Source: Macrostomum lignano (lineage: Eukaryota). Taken from it: 64,000 bases of DNA. Each line of letters opens with the position of its first letter. The first letter of the stretch is position 1. The stretch covers positions 165,396-229,395 of the forward strand of contig NIVC01000322.1 in NCBI GenBank assembly GCA_002269645.1, read 5' to 3'. This document shows positions 1-62,517 of the stretch, piece by piece. The notes beneath the pieces were generated by a model. The model worked only from the letters and a program-made list of their open reading frames with translations, was not told the DNA's origin and did not search any database. A program made the position numbers and the translations under genes.

Positions 1-133
1 TCCCCAGAAAGCAAGCATTCCCTAGATAGTAAGCATTCCCAAGATATCAAGCATTCCCCAGATAGAAAACACCCCCTAGATAGCAAGCAAAAGCAAGCAT
101 TCCCCAGATATCAAGCATTCCCCAGATAGCAAG
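1..133 (+). repeat. Minisatellite, ~19-21 bp unit GATAGCAAGCATTCCCCA
   Basis: Tandem copies from the window start; the same array resumes at 1080 after an insertion. Confidence 0.95.
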
Positions 134-281
134 TGTGGTATCTGGCCTGTTGAGTGCTCTTGCACTTTTTGAGTTGTTTTGCGTGCGCCCTAGGCGGCCA
201 TACCCAGACCAGTTCTGGCTGGTTGGGGGAAGGGGGGGGGGCGCTCGGCCCAGCTTGATTCTTTCCCGGCGGCGGCCACTG

Positions 282-433
282 ATTGGCTGGGCTTGTGTTT
301 TTGTGTTTTTCTTTTTGGCCCCCAGTCAATCAGATCTGCTCGGTGGGCACGCTGATTGGCTGAGGGGTCGTCTCTTTTGTTTGGCGTCTCTCTCTCGCGC
401 TGTCTGCCCCTCTACCCTGTTAAGTGGTATATA
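282..433 (+). promoter_or_regulatory. Putative LTR U3 promoter (two inverted CCAAT boxes plus TATA)
   Basis: CTGATTGGCT at ~279-288 and ~352-361; TATATA at 428-433. Confidence 0.5.
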
Positions 434-521
434 GTGCTCAAGCCTGGCCCAGTCAGCTCCCCGCTCACCGTTCCGCGCCCCGTGCCTAACTCTTCAAACT
501 AACCTAGCGATATTCAAGCGA

Positions 522-566
522 GACGTAAAGACGGTCTCTTACTGCGAAGAATCTTAATTTTGCATG
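522..566 (+). other. Spliced-leader exon-like copy 1 (45 nt, ends in ATG)
   Basis: GACGTAAAGACGGTCTCTTACTGCGAAGAATCTTAATTTTGCATG versus the M. lignano SL as I recall it, GCCGTAAAGACGGTCTCTTACTGCGAAGACTCAATTTATTGCATG: a 27-nt identical run plus the terminal TTGCATG. Not followed by a GT donor. Confidence 0.8.
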
Positions 567-580
567 CGATACTCAAGCGA

Positions 581-627
581 GCCGTGTCTATACGGTCTCT
601 TACTGCGAGGACTCAATTGATTGGAAG
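581..627 (+). other. Spliced-leader exon-like copy 2
   Basis: GCCGTGTCTATACGGTCTCTTACTGCGAGGACTCAATTGATTGGAAG. The 5' stem CCGT/ACGG is kept, the loop differs and the terminal ATG is lost. Confidence 0.75.
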
Positions 628-1079
628 CAAATAAAGCGGTCAAGTGGTGGCGATATTCGAACGAGCTCCACAGTTTCTGGCACCGGTAAGACCCCCGAGT
701 TCATTCGCTTCTTTAGCTTTTCCGAGGCCTTGCCGTAGCAGTGGTTCCATAACTAGAGCGTCATCACGCCTGCGACTGTGATCACTGCAGCACAGCAGCG
801 TTGTATATTGTGTATTATTGTAGTACTGTACCGGTTACTTTATATAGTGTGTACAACCTACAGTATCGAAAATAGAAGCACTCGAGAGTGTCACCACACC
901 TCGAGCCGCAGCGTGAACTCTGAGTGTCACAACACCAGAGGGATCGAACTATTATCGCAGAGCGTCGTCACGCCTGCTCGTATCCATAAAAGTACAGACA
1001 GAGCGTCACTACGCCTGTTATATTACATATAATATATTGTACTCGAGACTGGGCACCCAAACCGACCCGGGTCACGACA

Positions 1080-1427
1080 CAAGCATTCCCCATGATAGCA
1101 AGCATTCCCCAGATAGCAAGTATCTCCCCGATAGCAAGCATCCCTAGATAGCAAGAACCGATCCCCCTCCCAGATAGCAAGCATTCCCCAGATAGCAAGC
1201 ATCCCTAGATAGCAAGAACCGACCCCCAAAAAAAGCAAGCATTCCCCAGATAGCAAGCATCCCCAGATAGCAAGCACCCCATAGATAGCAAGCACCCCTC
1301 CACAAAAAAGCAAACATTCCCCATATAGCAAGCATTCCCCATATAGCAAGCATTCCCCAGATAGCAAGTATCTCCCCAGATAGCAAGCATCCCTGGATAG
1401 CAAGAACCGACCCCCCTCCCAGATAGC
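1080..1427 (+). repeat. GATAGCAAGC minisatellite, continuation
   Basis: Tandem copies of the same unit as 1-133. Confidence 0.95.
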
Positions 1428-2399: not shown

Positions 2400-3140
2400 A
2401 TAGCGTTGATCCACTTGCCCTTCACAGAAGCAGTATTCAACGAGGCATTGCTGCGCATTGAGGACAAATTTTAGAACTGACAGATCGTCCCTTAAACGTT
2501 TTTGGACTTCCAGCACCTGGAAAAACATCAACAAGAGAATTTGAGTAGGAAGATGCTGCGAGAAACTAGCTTTGACCGCGAGCAGCTTCGTCAGTTCATT
2601 GAGGAAAATGAGCCCCGTCTACTACCTGAGCAGGCAGAGGCGTACCAAGAAGTACTGCAAAAAGTGAATAACAATGTAGAAGGAATACTTTTCCTGGATG
2701 CTCCAGGGGCGACAGAAGAAACTCTTCTGATTAACCTCCTTCTGTCAAAGGTTAGACACGGAGGCGATATTGCAGTTGCTGTCGCTTCCTCTGGAATCGC
2801 AGCCATGCTACTTCAAGGTGGTTGCACTGCTCACTCAGAACTAAAATTGCCACTTGATCTGTCAAGACCTGACGCTAAAGGAACTGCGCAGCAACAACCA
2901 GCTCATGGATGGTGTCACCCTGCTGCTCTATGGAGACTTTAGACAGACGTTGCTTGTAATTCCGCGCGGCACCCCAGCCCAAGATGAGATCAATGATTGC
3001 CTCAAATCTTCTCATCTGTGGCCATCAGTTGAAAAGCTGCACTTGCGAACCAACGTCAAGGCTGCAGTTTATGGCGATGAAACGGCTCATCAATTTTCTA
3101 TTAATCTCTTGGAGGTCTGTCCTGTTGTGAATTTGTAACT
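2400..3140 (+). pseudogene. Helitron RepHel PIF1-like helicase relic, copy 1
   Basis: Translations EAVFNEALLRIEDK, FGLPAP, FLDAPGATEET (decayed Walker A), VASSGIAAMLLQGGCTAHS, YGDFRQTLLVIPRG, EINDCLKSSHLW; broken by frameshifts and stops. Confidence 0.9.
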
Positions 3141-8394: not shown

Positions 8395-8964
8395 TTCGAT
8401 CCCCCAATAGCAAGCATCCCCCAGATAGCAAGCATCCCCAGATAGCAAGCACCCCCAGATAGCAAGCATACACCAGATAGCAAGTACCCACCAGACAGCA
8501 AGCACCCCACCCCAGATAGCAAGCACCCCACCCCAGATAGCAAGCACCCCACCCCAGATAGCAAGCACCCCCTAGATAGTAAACACCCTCCAGATAGCAA
8601 GCACCCCACCCCAGATAGCAAGCACCCCACCCCAGATAGCAAGCACCCCACCCCAGATAGCAAGCACCCCCTAGATAGTAAACACCCTCCAGATAGCAAG
8701 CACCCCACCCCAGATAGCAAGCACCCCACCCCAGATAGCAAGCACCCCACCCCAGATAGCAAGCACCCCACCCCAGATAGCAAGCACCCCACCCCAGATA
8801 GCAAGCACCCCACCCCAGATAGCAAGCACCCCACCCCAGATAGCAAGCACCCCACCCCAGATAGCAAGCACCCCACCCCAGATAGCAAGCACCCCACCCC
8901 AGATAGCAAGCACCCCACCCCAGATAGCAAGCACCCCACCCCAGATAGCAAGCACCCCACCCCA
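8395..8964 (+). repeat. GATAGCAAGCACCCCACCCCA 21-bp minisatellite
   Basis: Homogeneous tandem array; resumes at 10633. Confidence 0.95.
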
Positions 8965-10632: not shown

Positions 10633-10750
10633 CAGATAGCAAGCACCCCACCCCAGATAGCAAGCACCCCACCCCAGATAGCAAGCACCCCACCCCAGAT
10701 AGCAAGCACCCCCTAGATAGTAAACACCCTCCAGATAGCAAGCACCCTAG
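10633..10750 (+). repeat. GATAGCAAGC minisatellite, continuation
   Basis: Array resumes in register after the TIR element. Confidence 0.9.
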
Positions 10751-27100: not shown

Positions 27101-28675
27101 TTAGCTAGTCACTAACTTACTGTGGCTTGTTTTTTAATAATTTAAATTTCATTACTTTTTTAATTTCAGTTTTTTCTTTGAACTCTTTTCTTCTGTCTAA
27201 ATGGCATTTTATACTTCTTTTTTTCCTGTCTTAGAGTGTAAGCGAAAAATTAAGAATTTTCTTGCTTGAGACAAAATTATATCTGCATGTAATGTTATTG
27301 CTTACTCTATATCAGTTTGCAGTATAGTTTAACTTTTTTATAAACAATTATTATGCTGAAAATTTTAAATTATAAATTTAAAAGAAACCAAAAGTTCAAT
27401 AACACTGTGTAAGATTTAAGTCTCATGTTTTTGGCACTTTTTGATTAGCCATATTTAGCATCAAAGAAGTGACAGTCATGTTGATCTTAATTATTGTTTA
27501 AATTTATAAGTTTAGCGTGTACTTTTTTGCTATTTTTCTGAACTTTCGAACCCTTCGTTTTTAGCCAGCATTTTGGTTTTCAAACATTCGAGAAAATAAT
27601 ATTCGTAGTTAAAAATTCTAAAACAGACAGAAGACAGGAGCCATAACGGGGTTGCATGGATGACAAACAAAAGAAACTGGAGAAGATCTGCTCAAACTCT
27701 GCCCTGCTGAAATCTGTCCATCTCTCTCTCTACCGTTGCATTCTCACTCTCTCCCTAGCAAATGTAAACAAGGCTCTGGCAAACAGCGAAAAAGCACAAG
27801 CTGACTGATATCTGCTATAGACTACTGCCGTCCCACCGCTCCCTCGCTCTCTCCCCCCATCTCATTTCTCAGCCCTCCTCAACCCGTTATGAGCTGACGA
27901 CAAGAGAACTGGCGTACTTTGCTTCGCTTTGCACACAAAGCAGAAAAACGTCTTTTGTGGGGAGTTGGCGAGCAAGCCAGTGGTTGCTAGGGTGTGCAGG
28001 TATTTTTTTAATTATGGGGGGGTTAGAGGTAAGAGATTGAAGCCAGTTCGTTGTTCAATAGGCTTAGTTTCAGGTGGAAGGCAGGTGAGGTGTTTGTCTG
28101 CCTTTCCAAGACTCCAAGACTGCTTCACCCCCACCCCAACCGGCCTATATTCCTCATAGGCATTTGCAGCAGCTGTACTCTTTGGCTTTTAATCTTTGCT
28201 GCCAATGCCGCTGCAGATGCGCGATGGATGAACGTAGAGCTTCATCTCATCTTTCTTTCCCTTTGAATTCAACTGCTGCAAAATGGGCTCCTTTTATGCC
28301 TTCAGCTGGACGGTTGGTTAAGTAAAGATGCACTTCATTATTTGCTCTGTCGCTGCCTACCTGCCTACCCTCTTCTCTTCTCTTCATCTCTAGCACAGTA
28401 AATCCTAGCTCACTTACACTCGCGCTCTCCATTATTTATGGTCAGCGCAGACAGAGACTGGTTTGACAGACACAGGCAGGTGTTATCTGTATCCAAGCAT
28501 CGACAAAATGAGTTAAAAAACGGGTTTCAAGTGTTTCAAGCCCTTTTCAAATACTTTCTCCTGAAATTCACCATTTCAGTGTGGACAAAATAAACTGCAA
28601 CTTTAATTCCGGCATAGTTGGTTATTGAATTTCAAATTAGAGTTCAGACACAGAGCGCAGTGACTGCCGTGTGCC

Positions 28676-29374
28676 ATGACCAGCGCACTGATGGAGCACA
28701 GCGGCAATGTTGGCAGCCTCCTGGCCGCCCGACGTCAGGCCAGGGAGGAGCGGCGCCGGCAGAAGCGGATAGTGATTTTCTGCAACGGCGACATCTTCTT
28801 CAAGGGCAAGAAGGTGAGCATCACGCCGAACAGGTACGTGTCCTACAACGACCTGCTGCAGGACCTGACGTACCGGATGCCGCAGAATCTGTACCTGCCG
28901 AATGGCGTCAGGCAGCTGTTCTCCCCCAGCAGCGGCCGACGCCTTGGAAGCATCTCCGACCTTCGGGACGGCGGCGCGTACGTGTGCGCTGGCAATGAGA
29001 CTTTCAAGCCTGTGAAGTATGGAGCCGCTGAGCTGCTGCCCTGGGGCAAAGGTGAGCTGATTAAGACTACTGGCAACTCACCGCATTGGGTTCACATGTT
29101 CACGCATTCACGTAGCTGTCTAACTGTCAATATTCTCTTTTTCTGTTCCCTGTTTTAGAGGGTAAGAGATTTTTTAAAAATCCTTTTGCCTGCCCCTGAT
29201 GCTAGGGGTTGAATCAATTTATTAGAATTCATGCACTCACCTTGTTTAGCGCACCTTTATCGTTTTAACGTAGGCTGCGTTTTTTTAGAAATTATCAAGT
29301 TTCCTTTCAGTTTTTCATTTTCTAGTTTCAAAAGAACCTGATAGATAGGTAGATAGATAGATATATAGATAAAC

Positions 29375-29471
<97 letters not shown>

Positions 29472-29486
29472 TATAGATAGATAGAC

Positions 29487-29537
<51 letters not shown>

Positions 29538-29538
29538 C

Positions 29539-29634
<96 letters not shown>

Positions 29635-32600
29635 CGATCCCTAACTACAGTGCCGTCTATCAAACCCTCTCAGGCGCGCAGTCCAGCGGCAACTTCGACT
29701 CCGCCATCTACACAGGCAGCAGCTCCCAATTCGCCGGCTACAACGCGTTCCCGCCATCAAGGTTCCTGAAGCGGCAGCACCACGGCCAGCAGCAGCCGCA
29801 GGCTCTGCAGCTCAAGCACCCGCCCGAGTCCAGCCGCTTCGCCGCTCTCCGAGGATCCCGCGGACACGAGGCTGGCAGCGGAGCCGGCGCCGATGCTTCC
29901 GCTGGCATCGGTGGTGCCCCCGCCAGCCCAAGGTGATCACCGTCATCAAGGACGGTCAGCGGCCGCGCCAGGTGGTGAAGATCCTGCTGAACAGGCGCGG
30001 GGTGCAAAGCTTCCAGCAGCTGCTGGCCGACATCTCCGACTCGTTCGGCGGCGGACGGCGCGGCGGGCGACTTCGCCGACTGTGGAGCATCGCCGGCAGG
30101 GACGTTCGGGACGTCGGCGACCTGTTCCGCGACGAGGAGATCTTCGTGGGCAGCTCCGGCGAGGAGGCGATGACGCTGGATCGGGTGTCCGACCTGCTGG
30201 ACGAGTTGTACCCCGGGAACGCCGAAGTCAAGTCGTTGCTCCGACACTGGGAGCGCCGGCTCCGACGCCAGCAGAAGCGACGCGGCAGCAAGGGTCACGT
30301 GACCGCTCAGCAGCAGCAGCAGCAGAAGCAGTCTCGGCAGCCGCAGCAGCTGCCGCCTCCGCGCGTTGAAGAGCGAGACAGCGGCTACGAGGAGGCTGAG
30401 GGCTCGGCGTCCACCCCGACCTCCGGCGCCGCTCCGCTCCGAGGCGAGCCGCTGCGCCAGGCTCTGGCAGCCCGGCGGCATTCGAAGCCGCTGCCGCTGA
30501 TCCACGAGCCGCCATCGCAGCAGCAGCAGCAGCCGCAGGAGCCGGAGGAGATCAGCCGGCAGCAGAGGCTGGCGGAGGAGCAGCGACTGGCTGATGAGGC
30601 AGCGACAGCGAAGAAGGACAAGCAGCGCCGGTTGGGTAAACAGCGCGAGACTCCGGCAGGGAAACAACAGCAGCAACAGCAGCAGCAGCAGCAAGCCAAG
30701 GGTCGAGTTGTGTTGCCACCGATCCAAGCCTCTTCCAAGGAGCCGCAGACTGCTGAGAAATCTCGAAAAGCAGACGAGAAGCAGGCGCGCAAGGAGAAGA
30801 AGCAGCAGGAGGAGCAGCAAGAGGAGCAGCAGCAGCAGGAAGCTGATCAGGCACTGCCGTCGCTTCCGCAGCTTCCACCGGAACCTGCCGCCGTGGCAGC
30901 CGCCGACACAAAATCTCCCAAGCACCCATCGCCAAGGCAGCTTCAGCAGCAGCAGCAGCAGCAGCAACATCAACAGTCAAGACGGTCATCCACACCGAAA
31001 CCGGAAACCCCGGTGGCTCGGGTCCTGTCCCCGGTGCGCGAGGAAGAGAAGGAGGCCACGGCGGCCACAACGGCCACCACTGCCGCAGCCACTGTCACCG
31101 CCACGGCTACCGCAGCAGCCGCCACACCATCTGATGAAGCTTCCAGCGTCCAGGAGACGCCTAGGAAGCCCGATGAAAAGAAGGACCAGCAACAGCGGGC
31201 GTCGGCCAAGGAGAAGGCCAAGAAGGAATCACCTCAACGACAAACTCTCAAGACTCCCAAGAAGAGCGCATCGAAGAAGCGTCAGTCGGAGAGTGAGAAG
31301 CCGGAAGAGCCTCAGCAGCAGCCGCCGGCCCCGCCCGACTCCCAGCGGCCGCTGATCCGCCCCATCTCATCCAGCCGGTTCATCAATGAACGCTTCGAAC
31401 TGGGAAAAACCATGGGCGACGGCAACTTCGCCATCGTCCGGGCCTGCGTCAAGAAGGAGAGCCGAAACGAATACGCCATGAAGGTGATTGACAAGTCCAA
31501 GCTGCGCGGCAAGGAGCACATGGTGATCAATGAGGTTCGCATCATGAAGATGTGCCAGCATCATAACATTGTCCGCCTGGTAGAGGAGTACGAGACTCGC
31601 ACGGAGATCTACCTGGTGATGGAGCTGGTCAAAGGTGGCGACCTGTTTGACGCCATCAGTCAGGTTGTGAAGTTCAACGAGACCCAGGCGGCTCACATGG
31701 TGGCTGACATGGCCAATGCGCTGTTCTATCTGCACAGCAGGAATATTGTGCACCGGGACCTCAAGCCTGAGAACTTGCTGGTAAGGGACAAGTTGATACT
31801 TTGTAGGGATTACAGTAATTACTCTTTGTTGGAGTTCAGAGTGTAGGAGCCTAATTTCTAATTTGGGGACATATTAGGGATTATAAATTTGGGATCTGGG
31901 ATTTGAGAGCATTCGGGATTTGGGATCTGGGATCCTGGATTCTGGGATCTGGGACGTGGGATTTGGGATCTGGGATCTGAGATTAGGGATCTGAGATTAG
32001 GGATCTGAGATTAGGGATCTGAGATTAGGGATCTAGGATCTTGGATCTGGGATTTGGGATCTGGTAGCGCTATGGGAATATGACACGCCATTTTATCTTC
32101 CATCCGCAGGTTTACCGCACCAAAGACAATCGGATCAGCTTGAAACTGGGCGACTTCGGTCTTGCGATGGAGGTTGAGAAGCCGATTTACACAGTCTGCG
32201 GAACCCCTACCTATGTTGCTCCGGAGATTCTGGAGGAGAGAGGCGAGTGTTGCTATTGCTTCACTTCTAGACGTAACCTTGATTCTCCAATTAGACAGGT
32301 GAAAGATCCAATTAGACATGTGAAACATTCAATTAGACAGGTGAAACATTCAATTAGACACGTGAAACATCCAATTAGACACGTGAAACATCCAATTAGA
32401 CAGGTGAAACATCCAATTAGAGTGGTGAAACAACCAATGAGAGTGGTGAAACATCCAAGTAGAGTGGTGAAACATCCAATTAGACAGGTGAAACATCCAA
32501 TTAGACAGGTGAAACATTCAATTAGACAGGTGAAACATCCAATTAGACAGGTGAAACATCCAATTAGACAGGTGAAACATCCAATTAGACAGGTGAAACA

Positions 32601-41054: not shown

Positions 41055-41519
41055 TCAAGCGTCTTGCATGAGCCAGCTCTCCTCAACAATAGCACGAACT
41101 TTCTTCTCATATTCCCGCTTATTCTCCTGGTAGAGAGTGGCGGCAACGTTATTGGCTGGTGAGTTCGGGTTCGGCTCGTCCAGCAGAGACTGAATGGAGG
41201 TGAGGATTGCTGACACATCGTAGGTGGGGCTCCACTTGCTCTGCAGAATGTCCAAACAGATACTGCCATCCGCGTACACATTGGGGTGGAACATTTTCGA
41301 TACGAATCTAACCGTAGGCGGCTTATTGGGATATTCCTCAGTGAACTCCATGGTCAGCTGGAAGGTGCCGTCCTCGAACGGGGTGTCCTGAGGACCGAAT
41401 ATGACGCAATTCCACTGCATAATATTGTCCTCCTTGGGTGCACCAGACACCCCGGCTGGAGGGTCCTCTTGGAGGCGCTTGAAATCTCGGATTAAACGAC
41501 GACGCGACGGGGTTGCCAT
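41055..41519 (-). CDS. UBE2A: Ubiquitin-conjugating enzyme E2 RAD6/UBE2A-B (154 aa, intronless)
   Basis: [21 protein letters not shown]...[17 protein letters not shown]...[18 protein letters not shown]; intact ORF. Confidence 0.98.
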
Positions 41520-43703: not shown

Positions 43704-44991
43704 TGAGGGGCACTAAAAAAGTTCTAAGCCTGACCAAGATCCCATGGTCACAAAGCACTGAAAATTGATCCTTTAACACAATATGTTGATAGTCTTTGAC
43801 AAAATTTTCAGCTCTCTAGGCATTACTAAAGTTTCATAGCACCTTAATATTTTCAGCTACCTATGGCAAATTCTCAAGAACTAAAAATGAAGTACAGGAT
43901 AGTGATCAAATTTCTGACCTTAAAGGGCTCAAAAGCTGCTGAAATCCAAAGTTGCATGGCTGCCATATATGCTAGGGCTACCCCTTCATATGCCACTGTC
44001 AAGCATTGGGCAGCCAAGTTCAAGCGTGGCCCCGACTCTCTCGAAGATGACCCTCGATGTGGGCGTCCCGGACTGCTGTTACTACTGACAACATCCAGCA
44101 CATCCAGGCCCTGGTTGATGGCAACTGGCGGATAAAGGTCAGGGAACTTGCGGCGGACACTGGGCTTTCTGACCCACAGGTCATTGAGATCCTGCACTAG
44201 CATCTTCATCTGTCAAAGGTCTCAGCCTGATGGATCCCACAAATCTTGACAAGCAACCAGAAGTCCGCATAGTTGCAGTATGTGAAGCTTGTCCTGCGAA
44301 CTTACAATCTAGATCCTGCCGGCTTTCTGTCTTGCTGTGTGACCAGTGATGAGACATGGATCCACCACCATGATCCTGAGTCAAAGGAGGAGTTGAAGCA
44401 ATGGCTGCCAATTGGTGTACCTGCACCACTGAAGGCACAGTCTAGATGCAGTGCAGGCAAGATTATGCTCACTATCTTTTGGGATGCCAAAGGCCCACTG
44501 CTACTAGACTTTTTGCCACACAAGCAGACAATCACAGGTGCCTACTATGCCAATCTAATTGCCCATATGCGCGAGGCAATCAAGGAGAATTGGTGGGGAA
44601 TGCTGAGCCGTGGTGTGGTGCTGCTGCACGACAATGCACCTGCCCACACCAGTGGGCTGGCAAAGGCAGCTGTCAATATTGCAGGGTTCCAAGAGCTGCT
44701 ACACCCTGCCTATTCACCAGACCTTGCCCCAAGTGACTTTTACCTTATTTCCGCATCTTAAGCCAGCACTCCGTGGGCAGCAATTTGACACTAATGAGGC
44801 ACTGAAGGATACTTCGACCTTCTGGTTCAAGGGGTACTCAAAGCAGTTCTTTCAGAGTAGCATCAAAGCACTGCAATCAAGATGTCACAAGTGCATTTTG
44901 GTCAAGGAAGACTATGTAGAAAAAACTGATTGCATTTGCCCCAATTCTCTTTTTTTCATACTGAGGCTCAGAACTTTTTTAGTGCCGCTTG
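43704..44991 (+). mobile_element. Mariner transposon (1288 bp), frameshifted DD34D transposase
   Basis: TIRs TGAGGGGCACTAAAAAAGTTCT / AGAACTTTTTTAGTGCCGCTTG, TA flanks. Transposase from 43863: HTH (LEDDPRCGRP), VTSDETWIHH, LHDNAPAH, YSPDLAPSDF. Confidence 0.95.
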
Positions 44992-45088
44992 TATCTTTTG
45001 TTCTGGTGATCCATTCCAAATAATTTCATTTTACATAGTTTTATAGTAGCAACTAGAGATACAACAAATATTTGGTTTCAATCCTTTG

Positions 45089-59642: not shown

Positions 59643-62517
59643 CAGTTTCCTAGCGAAGCAACGTCTTTCTACTCTAGTCGTCCATGAACGCATTTTTATC
59701 ATATATTTGAAGTACAAATATTGTTCACCTTTTCCGACGCGAAAGTTGCTACTCTGTTAACCTTGGTAGCCGTACATCTGCGAGCCCGATTGAGTAGCAT
59801 TACGATGTAGTGCAGACTGGATAGCGGAGCTGGCAAAGGACTCACTGTCGAGTATTCGAGAAGCATTCTGCAATTTAATATATTGCAGATTATAGTTCAG
59901 AAACATTAACGGCTGGTAGGCTACTTTGCCCCATTTGTCCTGCTCCCCAGAGCATTTACTTTATTCTTACAAGTACATACAGTACATACGATTGCTACAT
60001 TCAAAATACTTTAGCATGCACGAAAAATAACCGAACAAGACCCACCTGTAACGATTCCGACGCCATATGGCGATGCACTTGACATCCATCACTGCCACTC
60101 GCATGCTGAAGAGAGCAATCAACAGGTTCACCAGCACAATATTGACAACTATCAGGAATAGGAACACCAGGTATTTGCTGAACGCCACGAATCCCGAGCT
60201 GGCGGCGCACTCGAAATTGCCCGCCTGTCGCGTTTCATTGCAAGAGTCGAAATCAACCTTGCCAAAGTCGCCGAACATCAGGTGCATGGGAACAACGAAT
60301 ATGTGCTTGAAAATGGCGCGGGGCTGTCTGGTCACAGAGCTTGACATGATGGGGAAAAGCAGAGTAGTAAAAAATATCCCGAATGCGATAATGATGACGA
60401 AAGCGAAGTTAAAGAACGGCCAAAAGTCTTTGTAGAGCAGGCTGAGAAACATAGAGATCTTGGCCCCAGTGACTTTGAAGTAGTTGTAGAGGCTCACCAG
60501 GCGAAAGGCGCAGAACAGAAACGAGGCGCCCATTACGCTTTGACTGGCGTACAAAGCCTGCTCATTATGGCCGTACTGACCCAGCATTTTGAGCACAAGG
60601 CCGGTCCATATGAGCAGCAGGGCTATCAGGTCAACGTAAGCAAGCCCGAGAGTAAAGTTCCGACTAACTCTTCTGCTAGTGGTAAAGAACACCTCCCTTA
60701 GCTCGTGAATTGTCGCAAGCTGATTGAACCATTGCAGAGTGTGCGACGCGGCGCACAGACCCATAACTATGTCCACCTCCATGTGCTTCAGAGTTCGACC
60801 AAAGTCCATCAGGTACCATCCGAAGAAGCCGAGAAACAGGAACCAGTATACCGATGCGAGAATGAACTTTACCTGAATGGTGCAGCCACGCTTCGAGCAG
60901 CAGGGCGAAACTTCATTGCCACCCAGCCAACGGGGTTTGTCGCTGAAGTCGGCGTCGTCAGCCTCGTGTCTCCAAGGCAGCGGTGGCGGCAGCTTCCAGT
61001 ACTTCGACACCAGCTTGCTAATGCATTCAGTGCCAAAAAGCTCGACTGAATCAACAATGTCCACCAGCTCCATGGCCGATACGAACTCCAACTGGCTGTC
61101 GGCCGGTCTGCGACCTCTGGTGTTGAGACACTGCGGATTGAGAAACATCGGTCCTCTGACGCCGTTTGAGTCGATGAAACTCGCAGTCAAGTAGCCGAAG
61201 AGCAGCTGTCGTTCATTCTCCGACCCATTCGAGTACAGTGCTTCGAGCACGTTGACCAACACATTCAGAGCCTGAGTCTTGGCTCCGAGTAGCTGATCGA
61301 GCTTGCCTTGTCGCAGTTTAATTTTCAGTCTCAGCTGAATCAGCAAGTACAGCGTCTTTGGAATGATGTCGAATTGTGGCAGCATTGATAGTTCGGACAC
61401 TAAATTGGTTCTACTACAGAATATGGCAAAGTCAATTAGAGAAGGACTCTGGCTGTCGATTAGAATGGGTCGAATAGTCTCATTCGTGAGAAAATGTTCC
61501 AACGATCGACCATTGGTCAGCAGAGCAACCTGTAACTTGCTAATCACGCTTGGACTCATGTCTGCTGCGACAAACTCGCTAGCGATCAGATCACGAAGAA
61601 TCTCAGGTGAGTCCAGTTCCAGTGCTCGAAGAAGCCATCTCATTTGAGCCGATTGTTGAACGATTGAACTGGAATTTTGCCCATCATTTTTGGGTTTGAC
61701 TTCGTTGTTTCTGTCCAAGCTGGTTCCCACCATCTGACCATTGAAAAGAGACAGTCTGCTTAGAGCGACTGACTTCTCTGGAAGCGGCAGGCCACTCTCT
61801 AGAGGGTCAATTAACACTAGTAGGTCTCTGAGTTCCATTGAAGCGGATGCTGCTGCATTTATCAGTGCCTGCAGCTCTCCAGAGCAGCACGCCAGAGTGA
61901 CGCAATTTTGTCCGGAAGCTGTCTGAACGGTCAGGTCCAGACTCTGATCCAACAGAAACTTGATGTTCTTCTCGTGCCCTGCTTGACACGCCAGGTGAAG
62001 GCAGGTGGCTCCGCACAGGTCACCCCGAAGTCACGCAAAGATTCACCAAATCGTTAACGCTCAGTTCGCATAGCTGACTGAGCTCGGGCAGCAAATCCTC
62101 GAGTTGGTATCGACAGGCGAACACATGAACAGCATGAAGACCCTGTGAGTTGGTCTGGAGCGGGCCAAATGTCGGCTTCAAGTCGGACTGGGAAAGTCGG
62201 TGAAGAATCCGCTTCAATGCCTTCTGCTCCAGTTCGGTGCCGAGCAGGCAGTTCCTTAGACAGCCGTTTTCCTGACCGGGATCAACCCCAGCTTTGAGTA
62301 GACAGTGAACGGTGCTTGCAAACTTTTCTAAGTCGAAGTCATCGAAAGATTGATTAGATTGGAAGAGGGCGTGCAGCAGAGTGCTTTCACTGGGGTCGGT
62401 GACGGCTGCCCACTGTGAGAAATCTTTGCTCAACTTTTGCGTGTCAATCAAAGCGAAGTTCTTTGACTTGCATGCCTGGAACAGTTCTGCCGATCTGCGC
62501 TGAGACAACGCGTCCAT
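59174..62517 (-). CDS. TRP cation channel, ankyrin repeats plus TRPM-like transmembrane and C-terminal region
   Basis: Exons 62517-60046, 59867-59729, 59485-59174 with GT-AG junctions in phase. Ankyrin motifs TLLHALF, HAVHVFA, TCLHLACQAGHEKNIKFLL. Six TM-like segments, PMHLMFGD pore, NIVLVNLLIALF...IWRRNRYRMLLEY...PLPAP. One extra G at ~62022-62025 breaks the frame. Confidence 0.85.
59503..59643 (+). repeat. (TAG)n microsatellite in the last TRP intron
   Basis: Tandem array ending ~17 nt from the acceptor. Confidence 0.97.

What the first reader, a model, noticed from the sequence alone, without database searches (positions are those of the whole stretch)
134..1079. Solo LTR carrying two tandem spliced-leader copies in its predicted R region
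Seen: TG...CA ends with a CAAG duplication, then two CCAAT boxes, TATA (428), two SL-like units (522-566, 581-627), AATAAA (630) and a CCG|GTAAGA donor (686). Each SL copy is preceded by the same 16-mer GCGATAYTCAAGCGAG, and a third variant sits at 650. The two copies diverge from the recalled M. lignano SL at different positions; copy 2 keeps the CCGT/ACGG stem with a new loop. Established: flatworm SLs are added in trans and end in AUG. Inference: a retrotransposon has fixed an SL mimic in the part of its LTR that forms the RNA 5' end. It could mimic trans-spliced mRNA, or supply a promoter plus SL-like exon to neighbouring sequence. I do not know of this being described.
Basis: partly seen in the sequence, partly recalled or inferred. 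Interest (0 to 1): 0.8.

Follow-up and report, generated by a model that had tools for sequence, protein, structure and literature searches.

The report
Spliced-leader relics inside a flatworm solo LTR
A 946-base retrotransposon terminal repeat in the Macrostomum lignano genome carries two decayed copies of the worm's spliced leader, most likely fossils of trans-spliced element RNA that was reverse transcribed, a kind of event already noted in parasitic flatworms.

Summary
Window 134-1079 is a clean 946-bp insertion into an 18-bp satellite. It has TG...CA ends and a CAAG target duplication. On the + strand it has CCAAT motifs, a TATA box, one AATAAA and one GTAAG. Two copies of the published M. 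lignano spliced leader (SL) lie at 523-566 and 582-627, each after the same 16-mer.

The "SL mimic at the RNA 5' end" reading is not supported:
- The copies start about 70 and 130 nt downstream of the predicted start site.
- They are exon-only, with no donor, Sm site or SL-RNA fold.
- They are 14-18% diverged from an SL that is identical in three Macrostomum species.

SL copy 1 ends (ATG) exactly where a 15-mer begins, and the same 15-mer follows a branch-point-plus-TAG acceptor 59 nt upstream. That is the signature of a trans-spliced element RNA copied back into DNA.

A 2025 survey of parasitic flatworms reported 597 partial-leader loci in LTR and LINE elements and gave the same explanation.

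I could not test whether other copies of this repeat family carry the block. No M. lignano genome search was available, and the window holds no second copy.

Verdict: a new member of a known kind, of moderate interest.

The parts
1..133 (.). Host 18-bp satellite (unit TCCCCAGATAGCAAGCAT), left flank of the insertion
   Evidence: Tandem Repeats Finder; repeat families D1/D4
130..133 (.). Left copy of the 4-bp target-site duplication, CAAG
   Evidence: Read directly. Removing the element and one CAAG restores the satellite unit.
134..1079 (+). 946-bp LTR-like element (a solo LTR), TGTGG...CGACA. It is contig NIVC01000322.1 positions 165529-166474.
   Evidence: The same satellite lies on both sides. 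No gag, pol or integrase ORF anywhere in the window. No internal terminal repeats.
279..362 (-). Two exact copies of CTGATTGGCTG (inverted CCAAT boxes) at 279 and 352, with a CAAT-containing variant between them. Putative U3 promoter elements.
428..433 (+). TATATA box. The start site is predicted about 451-458 (inference from spacing only).
455..507 (+). Outron-like segment. It is 66% pyrimidine, has two CTAAC branch-point-like motifs (486, 499) and ends in TAG (505-507), a candidate trans-splice acceptor.
   Evidence: YAG only: it does not match the preferred [T/C]TNCAG motif of M. lignano (PMC8629364).
507..522 (+). 16-mer copy a1, GCGATATTCAAGCGAG. Its first G is the G of the TAG acceptor.
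   Evidence: (D7)
523..566 (+). SL copy 1: 44 nt, exon only, ends in ATG. This is the only ATG on the + strand of the whole element.
   Evidence: alignment to the published SL; ATG count
566..581 (+). 16-mer copy a2, GCGATACTCAAGCGAG. Its first G is the last base of SL copy 1, so the junction reads ATG|CGATAC, parallel to TAG|CGATAT at 507|508.
582..627 (+). SL copy 2: 46 nt, stem kept, loop changed, four substitutions, terminal ATG lost (GGAAG).
564..620 (+). 18-codon upstream ORF opened by the ATG of SL copy 1
628..649 (+). 22-nt spacer holding the only AATAAA (630-635). The R/U5 border is predicted about 645-660 (inference).
650..665 (+). 16-mer copy a3, GCGATATTCGAACGAG, not followed by an SL
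686..691 (+). GTAAGA donor-like site after CACCG. It matches the M. lignano cis-donor motif GT[G/A]AG.
   Evidence: Its resemblance to the SL RNA gene donor context is not above an empirical control.
756..1015 (+). Five dispersed copies of a 15-nt motif, GAGYGTCNNNACRCC, in the putative U5. Function unknown.
   Evidence: (D5, D6). Found nowhere else in the window.
1080..1083 (.). Right copy of the target-site duplication, CAAG
1080..1404 (.). The host 18-bp satellite continues as the right flank

Best explanation
Window 134-1079 is a solo long terminal repeat of an LTR retrotransposon, inserted into a satellite in M. lignano.

Proposed origin of the SL copies:
1. Its + strand reads promoter (CCAAT, TATA), then a leader, then a poly(A) signal, as U3-R-U5 would.
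2. Transcripts of the family were SL trans-spliced at the acceptor TAG|CGATAT (507|508).
3. Such a trans-spliced RNA was used as a template for reverse transcription.
4. The minus-strand strong-stop DNA therefore ended in the complement of the SL. When it transferred to the 3' R, the SL was fixed inside R. It was flanked on both sides by the 15-mer that lies between the acceptor and the transfer point.
5. Once one SL sits in R, the SL tail of the next trans-spliced template can pair with it. Each such cycle then adds one more [15-mer + SL] unit, giving the array a1-SL1-a2-SL2-(spacer)-a3 seen here. A simple local tandem duplication of one unit would give the same picture.

The copies are relics. 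They decay, and they are not SL RNAs. Their main present effect is probably a short upstream ORF from the one surviving ATG.

Shown: the insertion anatomy, the SL identity, the exon-only state and the junction.
Inferred: that the element is an LTR of a family, the start and poly(A) sites, use of the acceptor, and the strand-transfer route.
For: - Insertion anatomy: a clean break in the satellite, a 4-bp duplication and TG...CA ends. No coding part nearby.
- One orientation: the only AATAAA and the only GTAAG are on the + strand, downstream of the TATA box.
- Leader-like ATG depletion: the + strand has 1 ATG where 13.7 are expected (0 of 5000 shuffles). The minus strand has 7 where 14.2 are expected.
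- SL identity: matches the published SL.
- Exon-only copies: a genuine macrostomid SL RNA gene (L015) has SL|GTAAGAC, an Sm-like U tract and a three-stem fold. The window copies have none of these.
- The junction: the last base of SL1 abuts CGATACTCAAGCGAG. The same 15-mer (14/15) follows a TAG preceded by two CTAAC motifs in a pyrimidine-rich stretch.
- No shared changes: the two SL copies share no derived change relative to the canonical SL. This fits separate captures, or a duplication straight after capture.
- Precedents: PMC12582326 reports 597 partial-leader loci in LTR and LINE elements and proposes the same origin. Repeated, spaced relict SLs mark repeated retroposition in dinoflagellates (PMC5585692). 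An LTR element's RNA is known to be SL trans-spliced (Cer1, PMC3315495).
Against: - No second copy of the element was available. There is none in the window or in the 90 kb of other M. lignano sequence fetched. 'LTR of a family' therefore rests on anatomy alone.
- The candidate acceptor is only a YAG and does not fit the favoured [T/C]TNCAG.
- The 22-nt spacer between SL2 and a3 is not predicted by the simple model. The junction after SL2 has no matching acceptor in the element.
- The putative U5 would be long (about 430 nt) and carries five repeated motifs, which is more usual for U3.
- Both copies are about equally diverged, so the order of acquisition cannot be read from them.
- No expression data were available.
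Confidence: 0.55

Rival explanations
1. Functional SL mimic. The family keeps SL-like sequence in its leader because it benefits from it. The benefit would be to pass as trans-spliced mRNA for translation or stability, or to hand an SL-like first exon to downstream genes through the GTAAGA donor at 686.
For: - A 17-nt SL core is perfectly kept in both copies.
- The SL-derived ATG is the only ATG in an otherwise ATG-free 946 nt.
- A donor-like site follows within 60-120 nt.
- Solo-LTR donors are known to splice into trans-splice acceptors in Echinococcus (PMC4558846).
Against: - The copies are internal to the predicted transcript, not at its 5' end.
- From general knowledge, SL function in translation depends on the trimethylguanosine cap acquired by the SL RNP. 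An internal DNA-encoded copy cannot supply that.
- The copies are 14-18% diverged from an SL that is invariant across three species.
- Copy 2 has lost its ATG.
- Conservation of the core is not significant once indel events and post hoc choice of the block are allowed for (my estimate).
- There is no annotated gene in the 10 kb upstream of the DCX-kinase gene, and no gene was found between the element and that stretch.
Confidence: 0.1
2. Private, one-off event in this copy only. The SL block entered this single LTR copy, or its immediate parent, through a template switch to an unrelated trans-spliced host mRNA or through a local rearrangement, and then duplicated in tandem. It is not a trait of the family.
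For: - No other copy could be examined.
- The [16-mer + SL] units form a plain 59-61-bp tandem repeat (D7/D8).
Against: - The 15-mer that follows SL1 is the element's own sequence after its own acceptor-like site. It is not foreign mRNA sequence.
- A third copy of the 16-mer lies further downstream without an SL.
- The repeat phase coincides exactly with the SL 3' end. A random duplication would do this about 1 time in 20.
Confidence: 0.2
3. DNA-level capture of an SL RNA gene or pseudogene. The third unit (650-735: 16-mer, exon-end-like CAGTTTCTGGCACCG, GTAAGAC, U-rich stretch) would be the decayed original gene. Copies 1 and 2 would be partial duplications of its exon.
For: A local alignment of window 670-732 to the SL 3' end, donor and intron of the macrostomid SL RNA gene L015 scores 29. 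Only 4 of 1000 shuffles reach this.
Against: - Against the 143 GTAAG sites of the window as an empirical control, the 686 site ranks only 4th upstream and 36th downstream.
- About ten comparisons were made.
- There is no SL-RNA-like fold (z +0.5).
- The 16-mer is absent upstream of the L015 gene.
- Copies 1 and 2 have full exons but no intron.
- L015 is not M. lignano, so the M. lignano intron itself was not compared.
Confidence: 0.07
4. Not an LTR at all. It would be another kind of mobile or transduced fragment that happens to have TG...CA ends and a 4-bp duplication.
For: No partner LTR, primer-binding site, polypurine tract or internal region can be shown for a solo copy. The family could not be surveyed.
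Against: - TG...CA at boundaries fixed independently by the satellite break has a chance of about 1 in 256.
- Promoter-leader-poly(A) order on one strand.
- No terminal inverted repeats beyond 3-4 nt and no poly(A) tail.
- No Rfam hit anywhere in the window, hammerhead ribozyme families included.
Confidence: 0.08

Closest known systems
Partial spliced-leader sequences inside LTR and LINE elements of parasitic flatworm genomes (PMC12582326, Mol Biol Evol 2025)
   Same: These are leader-only SL sequences embedded in retrotransposons of a flatworm, with no other SL RNA feature. The authors suggest that retrotransposon transcripts that had received the SL were integrated. This is the same explanation reached here.
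   Different: That report is a by-product of filtering: 597 loci were discarded, and no anatomy was given. It covers parasitic species only. Here the host is the free-living M. lignano. The position within the LTR, the tandem arrangement and the splice-junction signature are resolved for one copy.
Relict spliced leaders upstream of dinoflagellate retrogenes (Slamovits and Keeling 2008, as cited in PMC5585692; PMC5585692)
   Same: These are exon-only SL copies fixed in DNA by reverse transcription of trans-spliced RNA. Several spaced copies in a row mark repeated rounds.
   Different: There the carriers are host genes, retroposed without LTRs. Relicts lie at the 5' end of the retrocopy and are often truncated at an AG inside the SL. 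Here the carrier is the LTR of a retroelement, the copies are full length, and they are separated by a repeated 15-mer of the element itself.
SL1 trans-splicing of the Ty3/gypsy element Cer1 in C. elegans (PMC3315495)
   Same: It shows that RNA of an LTR retrotransposon can be a substrate for SL trans-splicing at an acceptor in its 5' region.
   Different: In Cer1 only the spliced 2.4-kb RNA is trans-spliced, not the 8-kb full-length RNA. No SL copy is reported in the Cer1 DNA.
ta-TRIM solo LTRs of Echinococcus that splice into trans-splice acceptors (PMC4558846)
   Same: A flatworm solo LTR with promoter and donor can replace the SL at a downstream gene's trans-splice acceptor. This would be the route for the 'supplies a leader exon' idea.
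   Different: Those LTRs carry no SL sequence. No downstream target gene is evident here.
Genuine SL RNA genes (M. lignano 109-bp gene, PMC8629364; environmental macrostomid gene L015:616-724)
   Same: The same 44-nt exon sequence (84-86% identical in the window copies).
   Different: The genes have SL|GTAAG, an Sm-like site and three stems. The window copies have none of these and lie inside a larger Pol II-type unit.

Membership tests
LTR of an LTR retrotransposon (solo LTR) | 5'-TG...CA-3' termini | tested here: met
   TGTGG at 134, CGACA at 1079
LTR of an LTR retrotransposon (solo LTR) | Short (4-6 bp) target-site duplication flanking the single repeat | tested here: met
   CAAG at 130-133 and 1080-1083. 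The satellite unit is restored on excision.
LTR of an LTR retrotransposon (solo LTR) | Promoter, start site and poly(A) signal in U3-R-U5 order on one strand | tested here: met
   CCAAT x2, TATA at 428 and a single AATAAA at 630, all readable on the + strand. ATG depletion of the + strand. Sequence prediction only.
LTR of an LTR retrotransposon (solo LTR) | Same sequence occurs as paired direct repeats around gag/pol with primer-binding site and polypurine tract | not testable with these tools
   No M. lignano genome search was available. No RT, integrase or gag ORF in the window.
LTR of an LTR retrotransposon (solo LTR) | Multiple dispersed copies in the genome | tested here: inconclusive
   No second copy in the 64-kb window or in L001, L016 and L017. 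ORF handles found nothing. This is far too small a sample of a 764-Mb assembly.
Functional SL RNA gene | SL exon immediately followed by a GT donor | tested here: not met
   Copy 1 is followed by CGATAC and copy 2 by CAAATA. The genuine gene L015 has ATG|GTAAGAC.
Functional SL RNA gene | Sm-binding site and three-stem-loop fold of about 100 nt | tested here: not met
   z-scores +0.5 to +1.5 for 523-640, 582-700 and 650-760, against -3.8 for L015:616-724. No Rfam hit. No Rfam family matched the SL region. L015 itself was not scanned against Rfam, so I cannot say whether Rfam holds a model for macrostomid SL RNA.
Functional SL RNA gene | Exon sequence identical to the SL found on mRNAs | tested here: not met
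   About 84-86% identity, while the SL is identical in three Macrostomum species.
Relict SL left by reverse transcription of trans-spliced RNA | Exon-only SL copy in genomic DNA | tested here: met
Relict SL left by reverse transcription of trans-spliced RNA | SL 3' end abuts sequence that elsewhere follows a 3' splice acceptor | tested here: met
   Met for copy 1: ATG|CGATACTCAAGCGAG at 566|567 against TAG|CGATATTCAAGCGAG at 507|508, with CTAAC x2 upstream. Not met for copy 2.
Relict SL left by reverse transcription of trans-spliced RNA | The carrier RNA is in fact trans-spliced at that acceptor | not testable with these tools
   No RNA-seq data were accessible.

The most novel reading that the evidence does not exclude
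SL copies in the R region act as portable strand-transfer homology. Trans-splicing removes the 5' part of R. A trans-spliced element RNA can then complete first-strand transfer only by pairing its SL tail with an SL already present in the 3' R. SL-bearing LTRs would therefore make trans-spliced RNA usable as a replication template. The array would grow by one [15-mer + SL] unit per such cycle. This would be a self-reinforcing link between SL trans-splicing and LTR replication that has not been described, and it predicts unit-number polymorphism among family members.
Probability: 0.15. Interest if true: 0.7.

Novelty: new member of a known kind. Interest (0 to 1): 0.38.

Why it matters
If the reading is right, this LTR is a dated fossil. 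It shows that RNA of an LTR retrotransposon in a free-living flatworm is SL trans-spliced, and that such RNA can still be reverse transcribed and integrated.

- It extends a 2025 survey observation in parasitic flatworms to the Macrostomum model.
- It gives the observation a resolved anatomy: position in R, a junction at an internal acceptor, and repeated units.
- It has a practical side. Genomic SL copies in repeats can mislead SL RNA gene finding and the SL-read-based gene boundary calls used for M. lignano annotation. An earlier 'SL RNA' of this species was itself a misassigned genomic SL copy (PMC8629364).

It does not, on present evidence, reveal a new function.

Tried and rejected
Searches that found nothing:
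- Rfam at gathering threshold over the whole window, and at E<=10 over 400-820: no hit.
- Second copy of the element by blastn (word size 9) and nhmmer in the window and all fetched loci: only self and the SL.
- Protein 'handles' to pull family copies from public assemblies. The U3 ORF 135-434 gave no hit. The U5 ORF 757-1029 had no relative in 1.84 billion representatives.
- Exact look-ups of ORFs within 10 kb of the element, to reach the sister locus: not on record.
- SL core in viral contigs: 0 hits.
- Six-frame ORFs of the window against Pfam, looking for reverse transcriptase, integrase or gag: none. Only PIF1, mariner-type and host genes.
- The supplement of the M. lignano LTR paper (PMC12801592) is not held.

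Searches that gave comparators but no copy of the element:
- SL core in metagenome contigs: 14 hits, of which 12 are chance. Two are real macrostomid sequences: L015, an SL RNA gene, and L012, a trans-spliced mRNA end. L015 proved not to be M. lignano.
- Other M. lignano loci fetched (L001, L016, L017): no copy and no LTR-retrotransposon genes.

Ideas rejected:
- The 16-mer is a decayed middle part of the SL: not significant (125 of 2000 shuffles at best).
- The spacer 628-649 is a decayed SL 5' part, or a copy of the sequence before a1: not significant.
- The third unit is a decayed SL RNA gene: fails the empirical control and the fold test.
- The element should be read on the minus strand. 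A TATAAA is there at 844, but there is no poly(A) signal, ATG depletion is weaker, and the SL would be antisense.
- Heat-shock elements like those in other M. lignano LTRs: none.
Full report
**Source.** The window is Macrostomum lignano assembly GCA_002269645.1, contig NIVC01000322.1, positions 165396-229395.
- A single-exon ubiquitin-conjugating enzyme gene of the window retrieves that contig. The 20,465 bp fetched are identical to the window.
- A doublecortin-kinase ORF matches an M. lignano protein at 100%.
- A sister copy of the locus lies on NIVC01000048.1, at 94-99.6% identity.
- The published M. lignano spliced leader (SL) is therefore the right comparator. I took it from papers: the 35-nt form from PMC8629364 and the 44-nt form from PMC5173321.

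- The element runs from TGTGG (134) to CGACA (1079). It interrupts an 18-bp satellite that continues in phase on the other side.
- CAAG is present at 130-133 and 1080-1083.
- CTGATTGGCTG, an inverted CCAAT box with conserved flanks, occurs exactly twice (279, 352).
- TATATA is at 428. The only AATAAA on either strand is at 630. The only + strand GTAAG is at 686.
- SL copy 1 is 523-566 and SL copy 2 is 582-627.
- The SL core 17-mer occurs twice exactly, where 0.08 matches are expected with up to three mismatches.
- A 16-mer precedes each SL copy and recurs at 650 (0, 1 and 2 mismatches). It is found nowhere else in the window.

**What kind of element.**
- The boundaries are set independently by the break in the satellite. 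TG...CA at exactly those boundaries, with a 4-bp duplication, is what an integrase-made LTR insertion leaves.
- There are no internal terminal repeats, no inverted repeats beyond 3-4 nt and no poly(A) tail.
- No reverse transcriptase, integrase or gag ORF occurs anywhere in the window. With the duplication flanking this single repeat, it is a solo LTR if it is an LTR.
- The + strand reading is supported by the order CCAAT, TATA, AATAAA.
- It is also supported by ATG depletion. The 946 nt hold one ATG on the + strand against 13.7 expected (0 of 5000 shuffles). The minus strand holds 7 against 14.2. ATG-poor leaders are typical of long 5' untranslated regions that ribosomes scan.
- The single ATG is the terminal ATG of SL copy 1. 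It opens an 18-codon ORF.

**What the SL copies are not.**
- A scan of metagenome contigs for the SL core gave a genuine SL RNA gene from an environmental macrostomid, L015:616-724. It is not M. lignano.
- That gene has the 44-nt SL at 100% identity, then GTAAGAC, a U-rich Sm-like tract and three stems (z -3.8).
- In the window neither copy is followed by a donor. No segment folds better than shuffles (z +0.5 to +1.5). Rfam finds nothing.
- The SL is identical in M. lignano, M. cliftonense and M. hystrix, yet the window copies differ from it by 14-18%. They are therefore decaying, exon-only copies.
- With TATA at 428 the start site should lie near 451-458. The copies would then sit about 70 and 130 nt inside the transcript, not at its 5' end.
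- From general knowledge, the trimethylguanosine cap that gives an SL its function is acquired by the SL RNP and cannot be encoded by an internal copy.

**Where they came from.** An SL without its intron must derive from a spliced product. The junction shows which one.
- SL copy 1 ends ...GCATG and is followed by CGATACTCAAGCGAG.
- The same 15-mer (14/15) lies 59 nt upstream, directly after TAG (505-507). That TAG closes a 66%-pyrimidine stretch with two CTAAC motifs.
- ATG|CGATAC is what SL trans-splicing onto TAG|CGATAT would produce.
- The phase of the repeat coincides exactly with the SL 3' end, and an AG precedes the first unit. For an arbitrary tandem duplication I estimate the joint chance at a few per thousand.
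- I therefore infer that element RNA was trans-spliced at 507|508 and then reverse transcribed.

**The proposed replication route (inference).**
- In LTR replication the first DNA made stops at the RNA 5' end and must transfer to the 3' R.
- A trans-spliced template gives this DNA an SL-complementary tail.
- If the tail primes just after the 15-mer, the new LTR has 15-mer, SL, 15-mer.
- Once an SL is in R, the tail of the next trans-spliced template can pair with it. One more unit is then added upstream. This is the order seen: a1-SL1-a2-SL2-spacer-a3.
- The two SL copies share no derived change. This fits two captures, or a duplication straight after the first.
- A plain tandem duplication of one unit remains possible for the second copy.

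**What does not fit.**
- The acceptor is only a YAG. The favoured M. lignano trans-acceptor is [T/C]TNCAG.
- The 22-nt spacer with the AATAAA between SL2 and a3 is not predicted. The sequence after SL2 has no matching acceptor. Its likeness to the SL 5' part, or to the sequence before a1, is not significant.
- The putative U5 is long (about 430 nt). It carries five copies of a 15-nt motif of unknown role.

**The third unit.**
- Window 670-732 aligned to the SL 3' end, donor and intron of L015 with a score reached by 4 of 1000 shuffles.
- Against all 143 GTAAG sites of the window, the 686 site ranks only 4th for the upstream part and 36th for the downstream part. It has no SL-RNA-like fold.
- I treat GTAAGA at 686 as an ordinary donor-like site and reject a DNA-level capture of an SL RNA gene. 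One caveat remains: the M. lignano intron itself was not available.

**What I could not do.**
- ORF handles from U3 and U5 found nothing.
- Look-ups of nearby ORFs failed.
- The roughly 90 kb of other M. lignano sequence I could fetch has no copy.
- The family status is therefore open.

**Comparison with what is known.**
- A 2025 comparative study of SL RNA genes in parasitic flatworms discarded 597 candidate loci that lay mainly in LTR and LINE elements. Those loci had only partial leader sequence. [quoted passage not shown] This is the same phenomenon and the same explanation, so the finding is not new in kind.
- Dinoflagellate retrogenes show the same logic. Repeated, spaced relict SLs mark repeated rounds (PMC5585692).
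- Cer1 shows that LTR-element RNA can be SL trans-spliced (PMC3315495).
- Echinococcus ta-TRIM solo LTRs show that an LTR donor can take over a trans-splice acceptor (PMC4558846). I found no gene between the element and the DCX-kinase gene at 28.6 kb. The 10 kb upstream of that gene carries no annotated gene. My look-ups of ORFs at 2.0-9.0 kb found none on record.
- What is added here: the host is a free-living model species, and the placement between TATA and poly(A) signal, the tandem units and the junction signature are resolved.

**Verdict.**
- Observation: confirmed.
- Interpretation: partly supported. It is an LTR-like insertion with real SL copies in the putative R region, but they are relics rather than a mimic, and the class has been noted before.
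- Novelty: new member of a known kind.
- Interest: moderate.
- Most novel reading not excluded: the SL in R serves as strand-transfer homology that lets trans-spliced RNA replicate and makes the array grow.

Noticed in passing
window 1-64000: The window is extremely rich in mini- and microsatellites, with more than 20 distinct arrays and periods of 3 to 164 bp. Arrays related to the host satellite of the element (21-bp CCCCAGATAGCAAGCACCCCA) recur at 8436-8964 and 10633-10747.
   Followed up: no
window 756-1015: A 15-nt motif, GAGYGTCNNNACRCC, occurs five times in the 3' third of the element and nowhere else in the window. It is partly palindromic. Repeated motifs of this sort are more usual in U3 than in U5.
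   Followed up: partly
window 134-1079: The + strand of the whole element has a single ATG (564), the one contributed by SL copy 1. SL copy 2 has lost its ATG. This would fit purging of upstream start codons from a leader.
   Followed up: yes
window 2496-2939 and one further ORF: PIF1-like helicase fragments, probably remains of a Helitron-type element, about 1.5 kb downstream of the LTR.
   Followed up: no
window 43848-45020: A mariner-type transposase fragment (Transposase_1, DDE_3, HTH_48 domains).
   Followed up: no
window 28600-32000, 41055-41519, 59970-62030: Host genes: a doublecortin-domain protein kinase (+), a single-exon ubiquitin-conjugating enzyme (-), and a long ORF that looks, by eye, like an ion channel with membrane-spanning segments (-); it has no Pfam hit of its own.
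   Followed up: partly
L001 (NIVC01000048.1:159031-183260) against window 20223-43076: A second copy of the locus exists in the same assembly at 94-99.6% identity. This is consistent with the known redundancy and hidden polyploidy of this genome. It could show whether the LTR site is filled or empty, but the relevant part could not be fetched.
   Followed up: partly
L015:616-724 (Ga0302322_100095745): A complete SL RNA gene from an environmental metagenome. Its 44-nt SL is identical to that of M. lignano, although the neighbouring Na/K-ATPase beta-like gene has no close M. lignano match (best 77%). The SL is thus conserved well beyond the three sequenced Macrostomum species.
   Followed up: partly
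L012:1-40 (Ga0316592_1034293): A metagenome or metatranscriptome contig that starts with the macrostomid SL joined to coding-like sequence. This is a trans-spliced mRNA end of an environmental flatworm.
   Followed up: no
L004, L009, L010: Three contigs from different samples share one about-100-nt sequence around a chance match to the SL core. It is a repeated element of some unrelated organism.
   Followed up: no
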